Made by a program: the position numbers and the translations under genes. A stretch of 54,932 nt of DNA from Octopus bimaculoides (Eukaryota). Of this stretch, positions 11,758 through 51,571 are shown one piece after another; positions within the stretch are counted from its first letter, which is position 1; each line of letters begins with the position of its first letter. The notes beneath the pieces were generated by a model that had not been told where the DNA came from, ran no database searches, and was given only the letters and a program-made list of their open reading frames with translations. The stretch covers positions 4,684,718 through 4,739,649 of the forward strand of contig NC_069006.1 in NCBI RefSeq assembly GCF_001194135.2. Reading direction: 5' to 3'.

Positions 11758-12418
11758 NNNNNNNNNNNNNNNNNNNNNNNNNNNNNNNNNNNNNNNNNNN
11801 NNNNNNNNNNNNNNNNNNNNNNNNNNNNNNNNNNNNNNNNNNNNNNNNNNNNNNNNNNNNNNNNNNNNNNNNNNNNNNNNNNNNNNNNNNNNNNNNNNNN
11901 NNNNNNNNNNNNNNNNNNNNNNNNNNNNNNNNNNNNNNNNNNNNNNNNNNNNNNNNNNNNNNNNNNNNNNNNNNNNNNNNNNNNNNNNNNNNNNNNNNNN
12001 NNNNNNNNNNNNNNNNNNNNNNNNNNNNNNNNNNNNNNNNNNNNNNNNNNNNNNNNNNNTTTTTTTTTTTTTTTTTTGCATGTCCCTTTTTCATGTTATT
12101 TTCTTGTACATTTTATGTAATTTTTTTCTTGTGTTCTTTCAGATTTCCCATTTCCAAACCTCTTTGTTTATTTTCTTTCTCTTTGATACTCCAACAACAG
12201 TCAACCCAATGACAGACTCTCTCTAAACTGAGAAACTAGAAAAAACTACCATAATTAGAGTAGTTAGCATTTGTCAAGATTTTCATGTAATGACCATAAA
12301 ACTTCCTTGGCCTGTGAATTTTAGTGAGGTCAGCCAGAAGAAACAGGGCCACTTTATAGATTTTAAGGTCCAGTAATTTTAAAGGAAGGGAGATCATTTC
12401 TTTTAAATCCCACATATA

Positions 12419-14945: not shown

Positions 14946-15071
14946 CTGTGAGCCCATGAGACAAGGACCTCTTGGCTGAGAGAGGGGCATAGAGGACCTC
15001 TTGGGAAAGTCTGGTCCCTATTCTGTTTGGCTTTTTTGCTGACCTGCCAAGTTATGGGGACATACGGAAAT

Positions 15072-15120
<49 letters not shown>

Positions 15121-15407
15121 ACATACTGGACTTCTTTCAGTTTCCATCTACCAAATCCACTCACAAGGCTTTGGTTGGCCTATGGCTATAGTAGAAGACA
15201 CTTGCCTGTGGTGCCACACAGTGGAACTGAACCCAAAACCACATCCATACATATATGCTGTTCTTATCACAGTATATATGGCTAATATGTGTGTCCCCCC
15301 ATACTGTAATTGTTTTAGCTTCAAAACATGATCCCAGATCAAATCACTTGCCTGACAAATATTTTTCCAATATTCATTCATGTTTTTCCCCCATTTTCTC
15401 CTTTCAG

Positions 15408-21768: not shown

Positions 21769-24700
21769 ATAAATTTAATTTATTTATTTTTCACTGGATT
21801 TATTTCTCGGCCCCTTGCTTTTTGGCTTGGGTTGAAGGGTCTGTCTTGTGAGGCTTTTCTGTGATACCCCAACTCTGCAGGAAAGGCACACAGTCATAAA
21901 AACCATGCCAAAACTAACACAGAAGTCTGGTGCAGCTCCTGTCAAACTATCCAGCCCATGCCAGCATGGAAAGCAGACATTAAATAATGATGTCTGTAGT
22001 ACAAGAGCTGTGAGCTTTCAATATGGTTAGCCTCTTGCTGGAAAGGCCTACAAGAGAGATTCTTCAAACTGAACCAACTGGAAAGAGACCCAAGGAGAGA
22101 CCAAGAACAAAATGGTTGGAGAAGATCCATATTTTCAGTTCGTTGTGCTTGAGAATCCAGCCAGAAATTGTAATGACAGTTGCTTCTGATAGGGCCCCCT
22201 ATGAAAGAGGTGCCTGAGGACTCTAACCCCCACTATGACCTTCCAAGGAATAGTAGGCAGCAAAAATGGATGGATGGATTTTTTTTTACTGTCCCCCCTT
22301 TTCATGTATGTTTTCCAAGCATCTGTTTTGAATTGAGGACAAAATTTGCTGAGTGAAATTTTTTTATGGCTGGATGCCCTTCCTGTTGCCAACCATCATA
22401 TTTCCTTTCCCCCTGGCTTACAAATGGAGGAGACAACTTGTATGGTGAGGACACTTGTTTACAACTTTGATGTGATGTCAAGACAAGGACATACACACAC
22501 ACACGACAAGCTTCTTATAGATTCTGTCTACCAAATCCACTCTCAAGGCTTTAAGTAGAAGACACTTGCCCAAGGTGCCACTTAGTGGAACTGAACCCTG
22601 CAACCTTGAAACCACTTGGTTGGACAATAAATTTCTTAAACCCTCAGCCATGCTTTCACCCCACCCCCACCCACCCCACTTCNNNNNNNNNNNNNNNNNN
22701 NNNNNNNNNNNNNNNNNNNNNNNNNNNNNNNNNNNNNNNNNNNNNNNNNNNNNNNNNNNNNNNNNNNNNNNNNNNNNNNNNNNNNNNNNNNNNNNNNNNN
22801 NNNNNNNNNNNNNNNNNNNNNNNNNNNNNNNNNNNNNNNNNNNNNNNNNNNNNNNNNNNNNNNNNNNNNNNNNNNNNNNNNNNNNNNNNNNNNNNNNNNN
22901 NNNNNNNNNNNNNNNNNNNNNNNNNNNNNNNNNNNNNNNNNNNNNNNNNNNNNNNNNNNNNNNNNNNNNNNNNNNNNNNNNNNNNNNNNNNNNNNNNNNN
23001 NNNNNNNNNNNNNNNNNNNNNNNNNNNNNNNNNNNNNNNNNNNNNNNNNNNNNNNNNNNNNNNNNNNNNNNNNNNNNNNNNNNNNNNNNNNNNNNNNNNN
23101 NNNNNNNNNNNNNNNNNNNNNNNNNNNNNNNNNNNNNNNNNNNNNNNNNNNNNNNNNNNNNNNNNNNNNNNNNNNNNNNNNNNNNNNNNNNNNNNNNNNN
23201 NNNNNNNNNNNNNNNNNNNNNNNNNNNNNNNNNNNNNNNNNNNNNNNNNNNNNNNNNNNNNNNNNNNNNNNNNNNNNNNNNNNNNNNNNNNNNNNNNNNN
23301 NNNNNNNNNNNNNNNNNNNNNNNNNNNNNNNNNNNNNNNNNNNNNNNNNNNNNNNNNNNNNNNNNNNNNNNNNNNNNNNNNNNNNNNNNNNNNNNNNNNN
23401 NNNNNNNNNNNATATATATATATATATATACGTACAGTAATCCCTCGCCGTATCGCAGTTTATTATTTAAGCTTATGTTGATTCTTATGTGGCATTGTTT
23501 CGCATTTGTAATAAAATAAATATGACTGGTCACCGTGCCAGTGGAGCACTAACAGCACTGTCGACAGTGTTCATTGCCAGAGCAGCTATCTGGCTTCCAT
23601 GCTAGTGGCCCATAAATAGCACCATTAGAGCGTAATCGTTACCAGCGTTGCCTTCTAGCACTTGTGCTGGTGGCACGTTTAGAAAATCATTCGAGCAAGG
23701 TCGTTGCCAGTGCCGCTGGGCTGTCTCCTGTGCAGGTGGCAAGTAAAAAACACCTTTTTGAATGTGGCCATTGCCAGTACTGCCTGACTGGCCTTTGTGC
23801 CGGTGGCACGTAAAAGCACCCACTACACTCTCGGAGTGGTTGGCATTAGGAAGGGCATCCAGCTGTAGAAGCTCTGCCAAATCAGATTGGAGCCTGGTGT
23901 AGCCACCTGGTTCACCAGTCCTCAGTCAAATCATCCAACCCATGCTAGCATGGAAGGCGGACGTTAAACGATGATGATGATGATATACAAATTATAAAAA
24001 TGACAAAAAAGATATACAGTACAGCACTATTTCTACTTCGTGGATTTTCACCTACCACAGAGGGTTTTGGGAATGTAACAGCCCAAGCCTCTTTGGAGAC
24101 ACTTGCTCAAGGTGCCATGCAATGGGCCTGAACCCAAGACCAGATGGTTGGGTAGCAAGCTTTTTAATCACACACGACCATACCTGCCCTTACTCAGGGT
24201 TAAATAAAATAAACAACCAATGACCAGTGAGAGTAGAGTAAAAGGAAATGTTTCCTATATCCCCTCCTTCCCTTTCCATATGGAATTCTCAACAGTGTTG
24301 GTCATGTTGTCTATGACCCTGATGTTTAATTTAGCCGAGGAGTTACCCCAGCAAAGCCTTTGAACTTCTTGTGTTTTTTTAATCTCTTTTAAGTTTTTAA
24401 CTCAACAGTAATATGCAGATGGTATCATCATCATCACCATCATCATTGTTTTAATGTCCACTTTTCCATGCTTGCATGAGTTGGACAGAATTTGTCGAAG
24501 CAAATTTTTCTGCGGCTGTATGCCTTTCCTTTTGCCAACCCTCAACTGGTAATTTCCCCTTGGATAGATATTGTTATGGGAGAATCCTGAACACCCTACG
24601 TGACTGAAGGTGAACCAACCGACTACAATAAATAAGAAAACTGTCAAGGACGGACAGATGACGGTGTTAGTTTGACGTGTGTTGTTTTAACCGTCAGTAG

Positions 24701-29524: not shown

Positions 29525-29956
29525 CCCTTTTATTACCCTATTTCTGTTGAGATGCTCTGTGTTTATTTCAATTAATTTTAAATATAACAAAGAATTTAGT
29601 AAAATAACTTCGTTATCATTAAGCTAGTGTTAGTAACATTAATTGCGACTAAGGTTTGGTGGAAGATTTTNNNNNNNNNNNNNNNNNNNNNNNNNNNNNN
29701 NNNNNNNNNNNNNNNNNNNNNNNNNNNNNNNNNNNNNNNNNNNNNNNNNNNNNNNNNNNNNNNNNNNNNNNNNNNNNNNNNNNNNNNNNNNNNNNNNNNN
29801 NNNNNNNNNNNNNNNNNNNNNNNNNNNNNNNNNNNNNNNNNNNNNNNNNNNNNNNNNNNNNNNNNNNNNNNNNNNNNNNNNNNNNNNNNNNNNNNNNNNN
29901 NNNNNNNNNNNAATACGGAGCCAGAGGTAGTTTCAGCCAGGTTGGTATCGAAAGGG
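29525..29956. mobile_element. piggyBac-like MITE (ccctttcgttacc family), spans a gap
   Basis: TTAA|cccttttattacc...ggtatcgaaaggg|TTAA; related pieces at ~10642, 11294, 18720-18910. Confidence 0.8.
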
Positions 29957-30822: not shown

Positions 30823-31079
30823 TTGTACGAGAAGCGGTATTATTCAGCGAACGATGCAGCCATGCGTTTGGGCATCAGTAACTATTTCCTGTCCCACATT
30901 ACCGAGTCGGTGTTCATTGTGCGCCTCTCTCGCAACGGATCAAACGAGCAGAAAGTCAACATTGGCCTCGGTTTGAAAATCCATCGTAGAAGTGAAGCGC
31001 CAGGTTACACCAAATTTATGTTAGACTGCTGGCATTATTCCGAGAAGACATTGGACTGTGTTCACCAATATTTGCAGAA
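30823..31079 (+). CDS. XRN1: XRN1 coding exon (LYEKRYYSANDAAMRLGISNYFLSHITESVFI...NIGLGLK...PGYTK...WHYSEKT...YLQ)
   Basis: attcacag acceptor, aa|gtaagt donor; 257 nt; RLG, N(V/I)GLxLK, PGYTK and WxYS motifs. Confidence 0.96.
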
Positions 31080-31159
31080 GTAAGTAAAGTTTTGGGGGGG
31101 GGGGGCTTGCTTATCATTTATCCCCGTAAAATAAACTTTTGTGTTGTGAAGTCTGATTA

Positions 31160-31400: not shown

Positions 31401-32481
31401 CCTGGTAAATTAGTATGGTGTTCCTCTGCAATATGCAGATTCCCAGGTGCCCAGCAGGTGTGGCAGTTCAGTGTAAATTTAGCCTCATCACTCAAAGCAT
31501 ATCGTTTACCTTTTACTTGTTTCAGTCATTAGACTGCGGCCATGCTGGGGCACCGCTTTGAAGAATTTTGGTCGAACTAATCGACCCCAGCCAGGTACTT
31601 ATTCTATCAGTCCGTTTTGCTGAACTGCTAAGTTACGTGAGCACACACGTACCAACATTGGTTGTCAATTGGTGGTGGGGGGGACATACAGAACCACAAA
31701 GAGACACACGTGTGTGTGTGCGTATGTGTATATACATACAACAGAGTTCTTTCAGTTTCCATCTGCCAAATCCACTTACAAGGCTTTGGTTGGTTCTGCC
31801 CAAGGTGCCATGCAGTGGTACTGAACCTGGAACCACGTGGTTGGGAAGCAAGGTTCTTATCACACAGCCATGCCTGTGCCTATAGAATCAGAGAACTGTA
31901 CCAGTTTCTTGTGTCTGTTTTGGCGTGATTTCTATGGCTGGGTGCCCTTCCTTCCAGTCACTTCATCTGTGTAACATCACACATTCTTTTCTCCGACTAT
32001 ATTTTTCCTCCTCTCCAGACCTTTCCCCTCTTTCTGACAAAGAGCCATGATCGAAGTGTCATCTTCCCCCTCTTTTTTTCCATCTTCAACTTTCTCTGTG
32101 TGTGTCAACCTAATATATTCACTACATACATCCTTTTGTTGTTTTTGCTTTTATTTTCAATTTGCCTCTAGATATATGTATTTGCGCACATTATTTCTGT
32201 GGGGTTTTTTTGTGTGTTATCATCATCGTTTAACATCCGCTTTCCATGCTGGCATGAGTGGGTCACTTTGATAGGAGCCAGCCAGGCAGAAGCCAGCACC
32301 AGACCTCTGTGTCTGTTTTGGCAAGATTTTTACAGCTGGATGCCCTTCCCGACACCAACCCCCTAGCAGAGCAGCAAAGATTGGGCATATTTTATGTGCA
32401 CATTTTATGACATAGAATGACATATCTAATGTGAATGCGCAAACACATATACTCATATCCATCCTGACATCTTTCCAACAG

Positions 32482-32899: not shown

Positions 32900-33935
32900 G
32901 TCCCAGCTAGGTCAAGTCCCAGCTGGGTCCAAGGAGACAAGCTTGGAAAGACTGGAAAAAAGGTGGAAGCAGAGAATTATATCAGGTAGCCAAAAGGGCA
33001 GCTAGGCGTCAGGTATATATAACAAAAGGAGTAGCTGAAGGTAAGAGATTTGCATGTGCCTTATGACATGAGGATCAGAGGCATGAGGTGTCCAGGATTG
33101 CAAAGCAGTGTATCAGAGAGAATAGAGACGCGGTAGGTGAGAAATGTATGTGAATGGATAATGGTATGCTTGTACTTAGTGACTCAGAGAAGAAAGATGC
33201 TTGGAGATGCCATTATGAAAGGTTATTAAATGTGGAGAATGATTGGGAAAAGAAGTCTCTTTCAAATATCAAACCAATTGAGGGACCATCCATCAGTGTT
33301 GATAGCAGTATAATTGATAAGGGAATTAAGGATATGAAGACTAGGAAAGCCCTTGGACCATTGGGTATCACTGCTGAGATGATTAGAATATCAGCTGGTA
33401 CGGGATACGGCCTAGTCACTCGTGTAGTTAACCAGGTTATTCAGGAAGGTGTCGTCCCCAAAGACTGGTGTAGTTGTGTTATAGTCAGCTGCTACAAGGG
33501 TAAAGGTGATGCCTTAGATAGAAACAACTACAGAGGTATCAAACTGCTGAACCAGGTGATGAAAGTTACAGAGAGAGAGTTCTGTCTCAACTGATTAGGG
33601 ATAGAATTAAACTAGATGAGATGCAGTTTGGTTTTCTTCCTGGAAGAAGTACCACAGGTGCTATCTTCCTAGAAGAGTATTTGGCCAAAAGTAAACCATT
33701 GTTCTTAGCCTTCGTCGACCTGGAAGCTTTTGATTGGGTTCCCTGCTCTCTGGTGGTCTCTAAGGAAGCTAGGAGTAGAGGAGTGGCTTGTTAGAGCTGT
33801 ACAAGCCATGTACAGTGATGCTGTCAGTAAGGTGAAGGTCAGCCTTGAATACTGTAATGAATTTAGCATACAAGTTGGGGGTTCACCAGGGCTCAGTTCT
33901 TAGTCCACTCTGATCCATTGTAGTTCTTCAGGTCA
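32900..33935 (+). mobile_element. RTE-clade LINE fragment (reverse transcriptase, frameshifted)
   Basis: EKKDAWRCHYERLLNVEN...CYKGKGDALDRNNYRGIKLL...QFGFLPGRSTT; stops and frameshifts. Confidence 0.92.
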
Positions 33936-34134: not shown

Positions 34135-34267
34135 GTACACTCTTCAGAACGTGTTAGATTTTATAAAGACTTTACCATGCCATAATATTAAACTTCTGAA
34201 AAGTGGTTCTATGGTGCTCAATGAAGGGGTTGTCGAAGCCATTGCAAATGTAGTGAGAAAGTTGCCG
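34135..34267 (+). CDS. XRN1: XRN1 coding exon (YTLQNVLDFIKTLPCHNIKLLKSGSMVLNEGVVEAIANVVRKLP)
   Basis: gttttag acceptor, ccg|gtgagg donor; phase 2 to 0; aligns to VQEIITWLKGHPV...ILDAAIVEKIE. Confidence 0.9.
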
Positions 34268-34577
34268 GTGAGGATACAACGCTTGTTTTTATCTGTCTCT
34301 TTGTTGTTTTGTTGATGTTTTTTTTTGTTTGTTGTTGTTTTAGTTTAGTTTTTTTTCTTCTTTTCTTTCCTTCTTCATAGACCTCAAACACATTTTACCT
34401 GTTCATCATCATTGCCATTGTTTTAAGATGTGTTTGTCTAATTCATCTATCTGATATATCCCTGTCATCAATAGGTACACACACACACATATACCTACAC
34501 ATACACACACACACACATACATATATATACCTCCTTTTTATTCTACACACACACACGCATACATATATATATATAAG

Positions 34578-35570
34578 CATGGGTCTAAGCTGTAGTCTAG
34601 TCACCCGCATAGTCAACCAGGTGATACACGAAGGAGTCATACCCAGTGACTGGTGTAGCAGCACCATAGTCAACTGCTATAAAGGTAAAGGTGACGCTTT
34701 AGATACAAATAATTACAGAGGTATCAAGTTGTTGGATCAGGTGATGAAAGTCACGGAGAGGGTCATATCCCAACTAATTAGAGAGAGAGTCAGTTTAGAT
34801 GAGATGCAGTTTGGGTTCGTGCCTGGGAAAAGCACCACTGATGCTATATTTCTGGGAAGACAGCTGCAGGAGAAATACCTAGCCAAGGATAAACCTCTGT
34901 ACCTGGCTTTCGTTGACACGGAGAAAGCCTTTGACAGGGTCCCCCGATCCCTTATCTGGTAGTCAATGCAGAAACTAAGGATATATGAGTGGTTAGTGAG
35001 GGATGTACAAGCCATGTACAGGGATGCTATCAGTATGGTGAGGGTGGGAGTGGATGCTCTGAGAGGCGTAGCTGCTAGAATCAGCATAGCCTGGGCAAAG
35101 TTCAGAAAGCTCCTACCTCTGCTGGTAACAAAGGGCCTCTTGCTCAGAGTGAAAGTATACTGTATGATGCCTGTGTGTGAACAGCCATGCTATATGGCAA
35201 GGAAACATGGGCTGTGACTGTTGAGGACATATGTAGGCTTGAAAGAAATGAAGCTAGTATGCTCTGCTGGATTTGTAATGTCAGTGTGGATGCACGACAG
35301 AGTATAAGCGCTCTGAGAGAAAAGTTGGACATCAGAAGTATCAGATGTGGTGTGCAAGAGAGACGACTGCACTGGTATGGTCATGTGATGCATATGGATG
35401 AGGACAGGTAGAGCCAGGAAGACATGGGATTGAGGTGATGAAGCATGACCTTTAAACGTTGGGCCTCACAGAGGCTATGACAAGCAACCGAGACCTTTGG
35501 AGATATGCTGTGCTTGAGAAGACCTGGCAAGCCAAGTGAGATCGGGACTGTGGCCGATGCCAGTACCACC
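34578..35570 (+). mobile_element. RTE-clade LINE, 5' truncated with internal deletion, reaching the 3' end
   Basis: CYKGKGDALDTNNYRGIKLLDQ...MQFGFVPGKSTTDAIF...DTEKAFDRVPR; then MLYGKETW...QERRLHWYGHVMHMDED. Confidence 0.92.
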
Positions 35571-40300: not shown

Positions 40301-40933
40301 CATCATTTTACTGTGCAGAGGTTCTCAACATGGATGGTACCGCCCCTCCAAGGGGCACGTCAGAGAAAAGATTTGGCTTTAGGGGGCAGTGAGGTAGCAT
40401 AATTAACCTGCTAAATTTTACCTATGGTAATAATTATATTATTGCTATATTTTGGGTTGGTCTTTTTGTTTTTTTTGTCAAATAAAACACACACACAAAA
40501 AAAACAACCATCCTGAAATAAAACAATATCTGTTTCAACAAATGGCTTTTCACATCAGGAATCTTGTAACACTCGTTTGTAAAAGTGATTATATTACACA
40601 TGATAAAACTAATAATGGCTGTTAAAATAAAATGAGATTTCCTCAAGCACAGGGAGGTCATTAATTTGCAATGAATAAAGTGTATTTACAACTTCTATCT
40701 TCATTAATTTTTTTATCATTTCATTGTTAAAAGAAGCTTATAGAATCCATTTTCAGAATATAACTTATAAATTATCATCCATGTTAAGTCTGTATAGTTG
40801 TGAAACCTGACTTTGTCACTTAGGTGGGTGCTGGGCATAACAACTACTTAAAGGGGTGGGTTGACTACAAAACAAAAGGTTAAGAACCAATGTTTTAGAC
40901 TCTGCTTTAATGAAAAATAATTTTCCATTGCAG

Positions 40934-41139
40934 CCCATCGCATCAGTGAGCAATGTTATACCTGATTCTAATGTGGAGTACAAGTTGTTTGACCGTATTA
41001 TAAACATCCGCAAAGGACTAGGGTCTCTGCCATTTAGCTTGAGGGGGACGGTGGTTGGTATCCATCCAGGGGATAAACCATTCTCGACCATCTACGACAT
41101 CCTGTTTGATGAAGAATTCTCAAAGGCTGTTGAATTGGG
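40934..41139 (+). CDS. XRN1: XRN1 coding exon (PIASVSNVIPDSNVEYKLFDRIINIR...LRGTVVGI...YDILFDEEFSKAVEL)
   Basis: cattgcag acceptor, gg|gtaagt donor; LFDR, LRGT and LFDEEF motifs. Confidence 0.96.
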
Positions 41140-41932
41140 GTAAGTCTTTTGTTTCTTCTTCTTTTCATGTCTGAAAGGTGCAGCTGTGGCTGTGAGCTGA
41201 AGAGATTCGCTTCCCGACCACAGGGTTTGGGGTTCAGTCCCACTGTATGGCACCTTGGGAAAGTGTCTTTTACTATAGTCCCTGGGCCAACCAAAACCTT
41301 GTGACTGCATTTGGTAGATGGAAACTGTGTGGAAGTCCATGTGTGTTTAATAATAATAATAATAAACGCAAAATTCTGTCTGTCTGGGACTCTTGTATCT
41401 CAGTCTCCATTTTCTCTGCAGAGACATACCTTTTTTGGACTCGGGATGATGACAGGGGGATAGCTGGACAGAACTGGGAAAGAGTTGCAAAAAATGCTTT
41501 GTAGTACTTGTATTAACTCTTTGCAGTCTGAGTTCTAATCCTGCTGAGTAACTTTAACTTTTGTCATTTTGGGGGGAAAACGGGGAAATGATAAAATGAA
41601 ACACCATTTGAATACTGTGGTTAATGTAATCAAGTCCTTTCTTCTAAAATTGCTAGCCTTGTGCCAAAATGTTGTTGTTGTTGCTGTTACTATTGTTAAC
41701 CCTTTAACATTCTGATTACTCTCTGTCAAATATCATCATCATCATCATTGTCATTTACTGTCTGCTTTCCATGCTGGCATGAGTTGGACGGTTTGACTGA
41801 GGACTGGCAAGCCAGGAGGCTGCACCAGGCCCCAATCTGATTTGGCAAGGTTTCTACAGCTGGATGGCCTTCCTAACGCCAACCACTCCAAGACTGTAGT
41901 GGGTGCTTTTTATGTTCGACAGGCACGGGAGC

Positions 41933-50377: not shown

Positions 50378-51571
50378 ATGTTGGACTCATGATCATAAGA
50401 TTGTGGTTTCGATTCTCTGATTGGGTTGTGTGTTCTTGAGCAAAACCCTTCATTTAATGCTGCTCCAGTCCACTCGGCTGTCGATGGGTTCCAACAATAG
50501 CTGAGAAATTGACCCAGTAATGGACTCATGCCCCATTCAAGAAGGGCAGTGTTGTAATCTCTGAACATATATATCCTGGAAACCAGAGGAAGCTCTGGTA
50601 TTATGACCCCAAAGGGGTCAAGACAAATCCTTAAATCTATTAAGTCTAAGCTCCTTTTTTTTTTTTTTGTTTCTTTTAATGAGTAATCTTTGAACATATA
50701 TATCCTGGAAACTGGAGGAAGCTCTGGTATTATGACCCCAAAGGGGTCAAGACAANNNNNNNNNNNNNNNNNNNNNNNNNNNNNNNNNNNNNNNNNNNNN
50801 NNNNNNNNNNNNNNNNNNNNNNNNNNNNNNNNNNNNNNNNNNNNNNNNNNNNNNNNNNNNNNNNNNNNNNNNNNNNNNNNNNNNNNNNNNNNNNNNNNNN
50901 NNNNNNNNNNNNNNNNNNNNNNNNNNNNNNNNNNNNNNNNNNNNNNNNNNNNNNNNNNNNNNNNNNNNNNNNNNNNNNNNNNNNNNNNNNNNNNNNNNNN
51001 NNNNNNNNNNNNNNNNNNNNNNNNNNNNNNNNNNNNNNNNNNNNNNNNNNNNNNNNNNNNNNNNNNNNNNNNNNNNNNNNNNNNNNNNNNNNNNNNNNNN
51101 NNNNNNNNNNNNNNNNNNNNNNNNNNNNNNNNNNNNNNNNNNNNNNNNNNNNNNNNNNNNNNNNNNNNNNNNNNNNNNNNNNNNNNNNNNNNNNNNNNNN
51201 NNNNNNNNNNNNNNNNNNNNNNNNNNNNNNNNNNNNNNNNNNNNNNNNNNNNNNNNNNNNNNNNNNNNNNNNNNNNNNNNNNNNNNNNNNNNNNNNNNNN
51301 NNNNNNNNNNNNNNNNNNNNNNNNNNNNNNNNNNNNNNNNNNNNNNNNNNNNNNNNNNNNNNNNNNNNNNNNNNNNNNNNNNNGTTACAAACTCGACAAA
51401 CGTGTGTGTGTGTGTTTGGTACCAGAACTTGAAAACAAAAAAAAAAAAAAAGAACTTTCAATAAATGATTAAATATATTTTCCGAATGAAAAGGTGATCT
51501 GTACGAAAATTAATATTTTATGGGTTTTGAATTTGAGTCTCAAGTACAAAATCTAAAGTTTCCCATATAGG

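What the first reader, a model, noticed from the sequence alone, without database searches (positions are those of the whole stretch)
30877..30909. XRN1 motif SRxTGS is genomically SHITES: candidate restorative A-to-I recoding
Seen: agt aac tat ttc ctg tcc cac att acc gag tcg = SNYFLSHITES. Human XRN1 (recalled) has SGYLVSRFTGS. A-to-G at 30896 (CAC to CGC, H to R) and at 30905 (GAG to GGG, E to G) would give SRITGS; editing 30880-30881 (AAC to GGC) would also restore the upstream Gly. Known: coleoid cephalopods recode extensively by ADAR editing, including restorative sites. Inference: these clustered G-to-A differences may be corrected in RNA. Caveat: transitions are the commonest substitutions, so plain divergence is a real alternative.
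Basis: partly seen in the sequence, partly recalled or inferred. Interest (0 to 1): 0.7.

Follow-up and report, generated by a model that had tools for sequence, protein, structure and literature searches.

The report
Octopus XRN1 His/Glu at conserved Arg/Gly
In the octopus gene for the mRNA-degrading enzyme XRN1, two amino acids that almost every other animal and fungus keeps as Arg (or Lys) and Gly are encoded as His and Glu. RNA editing could in principle change them back, but nothing I could test points to editing, so ordinary lineage-specific mutation is the likelier explanation.

Summary
Window 30877-30909 reads SNYFLSHITES, inside a clean exon (30823-31079, + strand) of Octopus bimaculoides XRN1 (RefSeq XP_052832848.1).

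About 110 XRN1 homologues cover this motif. The His column is R in 98 and K in 12, never H. The Glu column is G in 97, S in 10, A in 2, never a credible E. Bivalves, an abalone, a nemertean, mammals and Drosophila all carry R and G. One A>G change at 30896 and one at 30905 would restore the consensus. The third claim fails: the Asn at 30880-30882 sits in a variable column where N is normal.

Whether the RNA is edited could not be tested. No RNA reads, no other cephalopod XRN1 and no published site list covering this gene were reachable. Indirect evidence leans against editing:
- 30905 has a 5' G, the neighbour ADARs disfavour.
- No above-chance RNA duplex was found in the exon, the spliced mRNA or the flanking 3 kb.
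- Wasp, bug and pseudoscorpion XRN1 show the same excess of A>G-revertible substitutions.
- Published base rates for editing at such sites are low.
- XRN1 is a housekeeping gene, while strong editing is mainly neural.

Best reading: fixed G>A substitutions, one of them at a CpG.

The parts
30823..31079 (+). XRN1 exon encoding the helix-turn-helix and first wing strands of the winged-helix (D2/D3) domain. It corresponds to residues 842-927 of XP_052832848.1 and ends in phase 2.
   Evidence: Splice sites. 100% identity to P0121 and P0219. Pfam XRN1_D2_D3 hit. Aligns to Drosophila Xrn1 2Y35 residues 869-951. AlphaFold model helices and strands. Foldseek top hit 2y35_A at 4e-12.
30895..30897 (+). 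CAC = His (His866 of P0219) where homologues have Arg (98) or Lys (12). A>G at 30896 gives CGC = Arg. The context is C-A-C. The inferred ancestral CGC contains a CpG.
   Evidence: In the model it lies inside a helix (model residue 95 of helix 90-98, block pLDDT 89).
30904..30906 (+). GAG = Glu (Glu869 of P0219) where homologues have Gly (97), Ser (10) or Ala (2). A>G at 30905 gives GGG = Gly. The context is G-A-G, so the 5' neighbour is the one ADARs disfavour.
   Evidence: It is the last residue of the same helix, at i+3 from the His. Neighbour preference from PMC9989829.
30880..30882 (+). AAC = Asn. The column is variable, so this is not a deviation from a conserved state.
   Evidence: Column counts are S48, G20, N10, P9. 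Several homologues have N here.

Best explanation
These are ordinary genomic substitutions fixed in the octopus lineage, not sites that depend on RNA correction.

The exon encodes the winged-helix domain of XRN1. In its third helix, the ancestral ...S-R-I-T-G... became ...S-H-I-T-E... through two G>A transitions. CGC>CAC is the classic CpG-deamination product. GGG>GAG is a plain transition.

The two residues sit one helical turn apart (i, i+3), at the end of the helix. They may therefore be a co-tolerated or mutually compensating pair, with loss of Arg+ and gain of Glu- on one helix face.

The same exon departs from consensus at four more conserved columns that no A>G edit could fix (F>I, N>G, K>R, K>F). 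This suggests the domain as a whole has drifted in octopus. The protein made in most tissues is expected to carry His and Glu and to be functional.

Shown: sequence, exon, gene identity, species, conservation, helix position in a model, absence of predicted duplex, sequence context. Inferred: direction and mechanism of mutation, tolerance or compensation, absence of meaningful editing.
For: - The exon deviates at other conserved columns that are not A>G-revertible: I53 against F91, G50 against N81, R55 against K86, F65 against K61.
- Gene-wide, octopus differs at 50 of 367 conserved columns. Only 12 are A>G-revertible, and 24 are transversions or ambiguous.
- The same A>G-revertible excess appears in animals not known for extensive recoding. 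Ampulex compressa has 11 A>G against 1 G>A, Halyomorpha 8 against 1, Cordylochernes 6 against 1. The pooled other species have 61 A>G, 40 G>A, 14 T>C and 10 C>T.
- The 5' neighbours of the 12 revertible A's are G4, C4, T2, A2. That is no depletion of G and no U/A enrichment against the CDS background.
- 30905 has a 5' G, disfavoured in all metazoans studied, O. bimaculoides included (PMC9989829).
- The exon fold is no more stable than shuffles (z = +1.13). The spliced 551-nt context gives z = +1.06, with pairing probability 0.65 at 30896 and 0.18 at 30905 against a mean of 0.44 for all A's.
- The best complement within 3 kb (-32.1 kcal/mol) is weaker than for shuffled targets (mean -35.8). Only a 14-nt inverted repeat lies nearby, and it does not cover the sites.
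- The corrected Jiang and Zhang analysis finds the frequency of restorative editing (FR) below that of synonymous editing (FS) when all sites are counted. FR exceeds FS only above 10% editing (PMC8249491).
- Editing is much lower in non-neural tissues (PMC4384741; PMC8382921), whereas XRN1 is a general mRNA-decay enzyme (PMC10590902).
- Fungal homologues carry K and S at these columns, so the requirement is 'basic' and 'small', not strictly R and G.
Against: - H and E are unique among about 110 homologues at two of the best-conserved columns of the domain.
- G>E at a helix C-cap is a radical change.
- Both changes are exactly the type ADAR could revert.
- They lie 9 nt apart, and editing sites tend to cluster.
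- The species recodes tens of thousands of sites, 1,960 of them restorative in 3,587 genes by the original count.
- Structure prediction is a weak negative for ADAR substrates.
- No RNA data and no other cephalopod orthologue were examined.
Confidence: 0.8

Rival explanations
1. Restorative (harm-permitting) A-to-I recoding. ADAR deaminates 30896 and/or 30905 in a large share of XRN1 transcripts, so the translated protein regains Arg and Gly. Under this reading the G>A mutations could be fixed because editing masked them.
For: - The organism is a coleoid with massive recoding (PMC6881472).
- The edited states equal the conserved, inferred ancestral residues, and non-coleoid molluscs encode R and G.
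- The two sites are 9 nt apart.
- Predicted pairing probability at 30896 is 0.65, above the mean of 0.44 for A's.
- Sites edited above 10% are enriched among potential restorative sites.
Against: - There is no RNA evidence.
- 30905 has a 5' G.
- No duplex above chance was found.
- Base rates are low: FR is below FS overall, and median restorative editing was under 2.5% in the original, later corrected analysis.
- Animals not known for extensive recoding show the same substitution pattern.
- As a housekeeping gene, XRN1 would need high editing outside the nervous system, where editing is low.
- No XRN1 entry appears in the stored parts of five supplement sets. This is inconclusive because the key file was truncated when stored.
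Confidence: 0.07
2. Incidental low-level editing. One of the A's, more likely 30896, is edited at a few percent in neural tissue as promiscuous ADAR activity, with no restorative role. The His/Glu protein remains the functional form.
For: - By my rough estimate, about 2% of coding A's in bimac orthologues are edited. This uses 28,115 sites in 3,587 genes and an assumed ~1,200 nt and ~30% A per gene.
- Most sites are edited at low level.
- The C-A-C context at 30896 is neutral.
Against: The evidence against is the same lack of data. The per-site prior is only a few percent, and no local duplex is predicted.
Confidence: 0.08
3. Assembly error, or a polymorphism of the sequenced individual. Under this reading the species normally encodes Arg and/or Gly.
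For: The window comes from a single assembly (GCA_001194135.2) and contains many gaps: 13 N runs totalling 4,456 N. No second individual was checked.
Against: - Two separate base differences sit in a clean, gap-free exon.
- The older protein record P0121 (UPI00071CDAF9) and UniRef A0A0L8FRY0 carry the same residues as the current RefSeq model.
- Neighbouring codons are intact.
Confidence: 0.03

Closest known systems
XRN1 / Pacman winged-helix (D2/D3) domain, as in Drosophila Xrn1 (PDB 2Y35)
   Same: The exon aligns to Dm residues 869-951, with His25 matching Arg888 and Glu28 matching Gly891. It hits Pfam XRN1_D2_D3. The AlphaFold model's best PDB match is 2y35_A at 4e-12. The flanking exons give XRN_M, D1 and SH3_12.
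   Different: The near-universal basic residue and small residue at the end of the third helix are His and Glu. The exon is only about 45% identical to the nearest non-octopus homologue.
Restorative / harm-permitting A-to-I editing in coleoids (Jiang and Zhang 2019, corrected 2021; Shoshan et al. 2021)
   Same: A genomic A sits where the conserved, inferred ancestral state needs G. The change is nonsynonymous. The species is one of the four analysed in that work.
   Different: No evidence that these A's are edited. The 5' G at one site and the absence of a predicted duplex do not fit typical substrates. The gene is broadly required, whereas the model is best supported for neural-specific genes.
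GRIA2 Q/R site, cited by Shoshan et al. as the textbook restorative recoding site
   Same: It has the same logic: a single A>I change converts a genomically encoded residue into the functionally required one.
   Different: From general knowledge, GRIA2 editing is nearly complete and depends on a defined intronic complementary sequence. No such element was found within 3 kb here.

Membership tests
XRN1 (5'-3' exoribonuclease 1), winged-helix / D2-D3 domain | Match to the family's domain model above the curated cutoff | tested here: met
   PF18334 XRN1_D2_D3 scores 43.6 bits against a cutoff of 21.8.
XRN1 (5'-3' exoribonuclease 1), winged-helix / D2-D3 domain | Correct gene context: XRN_N, XRN_M, D1, D2/D3 and SH3-like domains in order on one strand | tested here: met
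   The gene call on L001 lists all five Pfam families. Window exons match 2Y35 in order. SH3_12 lies at 40865-41140.
XRN1 (5'-3' exoribonuclease 1), winged-helix / D2-D3 domain | Fold agrees with a solved XRN1 structure | tested here: met
   Foldseek top hit is 2y35_A at E = 4e-12. Model pLDDT around the motif is about 89.
XRN1 (5'-3' exoribonuclease 1), winged-helix / D2-D3 domain | Conserved S-[RK]-[ILVF]-[TS]-[GSA] motif at the end of helix 3 | tested here: not met
   Octopus has S-H-I-T-E. No homologue has H, and none has a credible E, among about 110. This is a deviation within a clear family member, not grounds for exclusion.
ADAR A-to-I recoding site (restorative class) | Genomic A read as G in RNA from the same species or individual | not testable with these tools
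   No RNA reads or transcript assemblies of cephalopods were reachable. Key papers are not held.
ADAR A-to-I recoding site (restorative class) | Organism with extensive mRNA recoding | tested here: met
   Octopus bimaculoides. It is one of the coleoids in PMC6881472 and PMC9989829.
ADAR A-to-I recoding site (restorative class) | Edited codon restores an ancestral amino acid | tested here: met
   30896 H>R and 30905 E>G match the consensus of bivalves, a gastropod, a nemertean, vertebrates and insects. This is not met for 30880/30881, where the column is variable. Ancestry within cephalopods was not tested.
ADAR A-to-I recoding site (restorative class) | Site lies in a double-stranded RNA region | tested here: not met
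   Exon z = +1.13. Spliced mRNA z = +1.06. The best complement within 3 kb is weaker than for shuffled targets. Only a 14-nt inverted repeat lies nearby, away from the sites. These are predictions only, so this is a weak negative.
ADAR A-to-I recoding site (restorative class) | Favourable nearest neighbours (5' U or A, not G) | tested here: inconclusive
   30896 is C-A-C, which is neutral. 30905 is G-A-G, with the disfavoured 5' G and a favoured 3' G (PMC9989829).
ADAR A-to-I recoding site (restorative class) | Listed in a published editome | tested here: inconclusive
   No XRN or exoribonuclease entry appears in the stored supplements of five papers. The O. bimaculoides recoding table of PMC9989829 is truncated, and the Cell 2017 and 2023 papers are not held.

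The most novel reading that the evidence does not exclude
Both A's are edited together at high level in neurons but not elsewhere. Octopus would then make two XRN1 forms: an ancestral-type Arg/Gly winged helix in the nervous system and a His/Glu form in other tissues. That would couple ADAR activity to the regulation of 5'-3' mRNA decay through the domain that reaches toward the catalytic centre.
Probability: 0.04. Interest if true: 0.55.

Novelty: already known. Interest (0 to 1): 0.22.

Why it matters
If the sites were edited, this would be a clean, structurally interpretable example of harm-permitting editing in a core mRNA-decay enzyme. It would feed the debate over whether coleoid recoding is adaptive or merely masks mutations, although it would be one more case among roughly two thousand already counted in this species.

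If they are not edited, which is more likely, the practical lesson is for screening. Calling a site 'one A>G away from the consensus' is a poor predictor of editing. G>A-type substitutions at conserved columns are just as common in XRN1 of insects and an arachnid. The His/Glu pair remains a small curiosity for XRN1 structure-function work.

Tried and rejected
1. Other cephalopod XRN1 sequences.
- The exon-only word search found no candidate.
- The 444-aa spliced query returned only fragments under 800 aa, none cephalopod-like. P0001 is a repeat-artefact model.
- The profile search gave at most 37% identity.
- The HMMER search of 50% representatives found only the octopus protein above 52% identity. 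The nearest relatives are bivalves at 39%.
- Two marine-metagenome fragments (P0122, P0124) carry SRITGS but cannot be assigned to a taxon.

2. Published editing tables.
- No XRN1 entry was found in the supplements of PMC6881472, PMC8382921, PMC9989829, PMC4384741 or PMC9068888.
- A codon-string search failed because of the '=>' signs in the table.
- Liscovitch-Brauer 2017 and Birk 2023 are not held.

3. Independent assembly. The locus fetched from GCA_001194135.2 is the window itself, so it gives no independent confirmation.

4. Mutually exclusive alternative exon with the canonical motif. There is none in the 77.6-kb gene locus.

5. Gene-wide excess of A>G-revertible deviations as a signature of editing. 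I rejected this after the cross-species control and the neighbour analysis.

6. Editing-complementary sequence. None was found.

Full report
**What is there**

Window 30877-30909 is agt aac tat ttc ctg tcc cac att acc gag tcg, which translates to SNYFLSHITES. It lies in frame inside an exon. The exon is bounded by a polypyrimidine tract and cag| acceptor, with the first exon base at 30823. It ends with a GAA|gtaagt donor, with the last exon base at 31079.

The 86 codons hit Pfam XRN1_D2_D3 (43.6 bits, cutoff 21.8). They align to residues 869-951 of Drosophila Xrn1 (PDB 2Y35). On the same strand the window carries further XRN1 exons in order. These include the helical catalytic part at about 7242-7398 and 8562-8681 and the SH3-like domain at about 40920-41139.

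**Which organism**

An HMMER search of 1.84 billion representative proteins gave one hit with an identical exon, P0121. P0121's 90% cluster contains XP_052832848.1, '5'-3' exoribonuclease 1 [Octopus bimaculoides]', and UniRef A0A0L8FRY0.

The encoding locus is CM046626.1 of assembly GCA_001194135.2, and the window is a sub-range of it. The second copy of the sequence is the same assembly, however, and does not confirm the bases independently.

**Is the deviation real**

I pooled the hits and aligned them to the exon.
- The His25 column (CAC, 30895-30897) is R in 98 homologues and K in 12. None has H.
- The Glu28 column (GAG, 30904-30906) is G in 97, S in 10, A in 2 and Q in 1. The only E comes from a spurious second alignment stretch.

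Named homologues carry R and G:

| Species or group | Motif |
|---|---|
| Pinctada imbricata (bivalve) | SRITGS |
| Ruditapes philippinarum (bivalve) | SRLTGT |
| Pecten maximus (bivalve) | SRMTGC |
| Haliotis rufescens (gastropod) | SRLTGS |
| Tubulanus polymorphus (nemertean) | SRITGT |
| Lamellibrachia satsuma (annelid) | SRITGT |
| Primate-cluster and rodent XRN1 | SRFTGS |
| Drosophila | GRLSGT |

The only single-base routes from CAC to Arg and from GAG to Gly are A>G at 30896 and 30905.

The third proposal does not hold. The column for AAC>GGC at 30880-30881 is variable (S48, G20, N10, P9), and Asn is an ordinary state there.

**Structural context**

An AlphaFold model of residues 772-1095, built on a seven-sequence alignment, has mean pLDDT 66 overall but about 89 around the motif. 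Its best PDB match is 2y35_A at 4e-12.

The model shows two helices, at model residues 79-86 and 90-98, followed by a beta hairpin. This is the winged-helix pattern described for XRN1 (PMC10590902). His is residue 95, inside the second of these helices. Glu is residue 98, its last residue.

The conserved Gly is therefore most simply a helix C-cap. The His and Glu side chains are at i and i+3 on one face of the helix. Fungal-type homologues have K and S at these columns, so the constraint is 'basic' and 'small' rather than strictly R and G.

**Can editing be tested here**

Not directly. The word-indexed protein database appears to lack proteins longer than about 800 aa, and it returned no cephalopod fragment for three different queries. 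The representative search found no second cephalopod; the nearest relatives are bivalves at 39% identity.

Supplements of five editing papers hold no XRN1 entry. The one table that lists O. bimaculoides recoding sites by gene is truncated. The two most relevant Cell papers are not held.

**Indirect tests**

1. Neighbour context. 30896 is C-A-C, which is neutral. 30905 is G-A-G. Across all metazoans examined, O. bimaculoides included, the 5' neighbour of edited A's favours U or A and disfavours G (PMC9989829).

2. RNA structure.
   - The exon folds no better than shuffles (z = +1.13).
   - A 551-nt spliced context gives z = +1.06. Pairing probabilities are 0.65 at 30896 and 0.18 at 30905, against a mean of 0.44 for all A's.
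   - The best duplex between the 46-nt target and any 80-nt tile within 3 kb is -32.1 kcal/mol. Shuffled targets average -35.8.
   - The only nearby inverted repeat is 14 nt long and does not cover the sites.

3. Gene-wide pattern.
   - Octopus deviates at 50 of 367 columns that are at least 85% conserved in 23 other full-length XRN1 proteins.
   - Twelve of these are A>G-revertible, against 3 G>A, 0 T>C and 1 C>T.
   - This looks suggestive, but the same analysis on each other species gives similar counts. Ampulex compressa has 11 against 1, Halyomorpha halys 8 against 1 and Cordylochernes scorpioides 6 against 1. Pooled, the other species have 61 A>G, 40 G>A, 14 T>C and 10 C>T.
   - The asymmetry is therefore a general property of which substitutions conserved sites tolerate, such as V>I, R>K and G>S. 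It is not a signature of editing.
   - The 5' neighbours of the 12 octopus sites are G4, C4, T2, A2. That is no ADAR-like bias against the CDS background.

4. Other deviations in the exon. It also departs from consensus at F>I, N>G, K>R and K>F, which no A>G edit repairs. The domain has simply diverged in this lineage.

5. Base rates.
   - Jiang and Zhang originally counted 1,960 restorative, 16,013 diversifying and 10,142 synonymous edited sites in 3,587 bimac genes. On my rough assumption of about 1,200 nt and 30% A per gene, that is about 2% of coding A's.
   - Their correction states that potential restorative sites are edited less often than synonymous sites overall. They are edited more often only above 10% editing.
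   - Median restorative editing was under 2.5% in the original, later corrected analysis.

6. Tissue logic. Editing is much lower outside the nervous system. XRN1 is the general cytoplasmic 5'-3' decay nuclease. The His/Glu protein must therefore work in most tissues whether or not neurons edit it.

**Other alternatives checked**

There is no second, canonical copy of the exon anywhere in the 77.6-kb gene locus, so mutually exclusive splicing is excluded. Sequence error is unlikely: there are two separate differences in a gap-free exon, and the older protein records agree. No second individual was examined.

**Conclusion**

The interpretation remains an untested candidate.

Weighing the indirect evidence, I put about 0.8 on plain fixed G>A substitutions. 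One of them is the CpG-type CGC>CAC, and the pair is possibly co-tolerated. I put about 0.07 on substantial restorative editing, about 0.08 on incidental low-level editing and about 0.03 on error or polymorphism.

Even if true, it would be one more member of a known class, so interest is modest. The decisive experiment is a simple read count at four positions.

Noticed in passing
window 41036 (AGC, Ser1055), 14462 (AGT, Ser609), 15454 (AAA, Lys648), 4146, 41006, 41099 (ATC Ile), 41123-41124 (AAG, Lys1084): These are further octopus-specific deviations at XRN1 columns conserved in at least 85% of 23 other species, each revertible by A>G. Lys1084 would need two edits to reach the consensus Gly. 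Ser1055 replaces the Gly of the SH3-like 'GLRG' motif, which is G in 22 of 23. As a set their 5' neighbours show no ADAR-like bias.
   Followed up: partly
window 30970-30972 (GGT, Gly50 of the exon): This is the opposite case. Octopus encodes Gly where 81 of 113 homologues have Asn (AAY), two A>G steps away. It could be ordinary divergence or a 'hard-wired' former edit. I could not distinguish these here.
   Followed up: no
window 33154-33900 and 34381-35400 (+ strand): Two reverse-transcriptase-like ORF fragments of one retroelement family lie in the same orientation (RVT_1 hit for the second). They flank the small XRN1 exon at about 34135-34267.
   Followed up: partly
many introns, e.g. window 1337-1768, 3256-3592, 6802-7047, 10333-10668, 15043-15328, 31562-31925: A short interspersed repeat recurs throughout the locus. 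In one frame it reads approximately '...SQGFGRPEAIVEDTCPRCHAVGLNPEPCGW...'. Copies flank the exon of interest, and those I noticed are in the same orientation.
   Followed up: no
L001 1001-1129 (upstream of the window) and window ~3-30: RefSeq model XP_052832848.1 deviates from invariant XRN1 columns across residues 1-45 and at 347-353 ('IIIxIYY'). This looks like gene-model error (a wrong first exon and an over-extended exon) rather than biology.
   Followed up: no
window 2656-3119, 6014-6681, 7871-8377, 9834-10329, 11758-12059, 22683-23411, 50756-51383 and six shorter runs: Thirteen runs of N total 4,456 bases, so some intronic sequence is missing. This is a limitation for the search for an editing-complementary sequence. 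Of these runs, only 29671-29911 lies within the 3 kb scanned either side of the exon.
   Followed up: no
window 31094-31104: A run of about 11 G lies 15 nt downstream of the exon's donor site. Intronic G-runs can act as splicing enhancers. I did not examine this.
   Followed up: no
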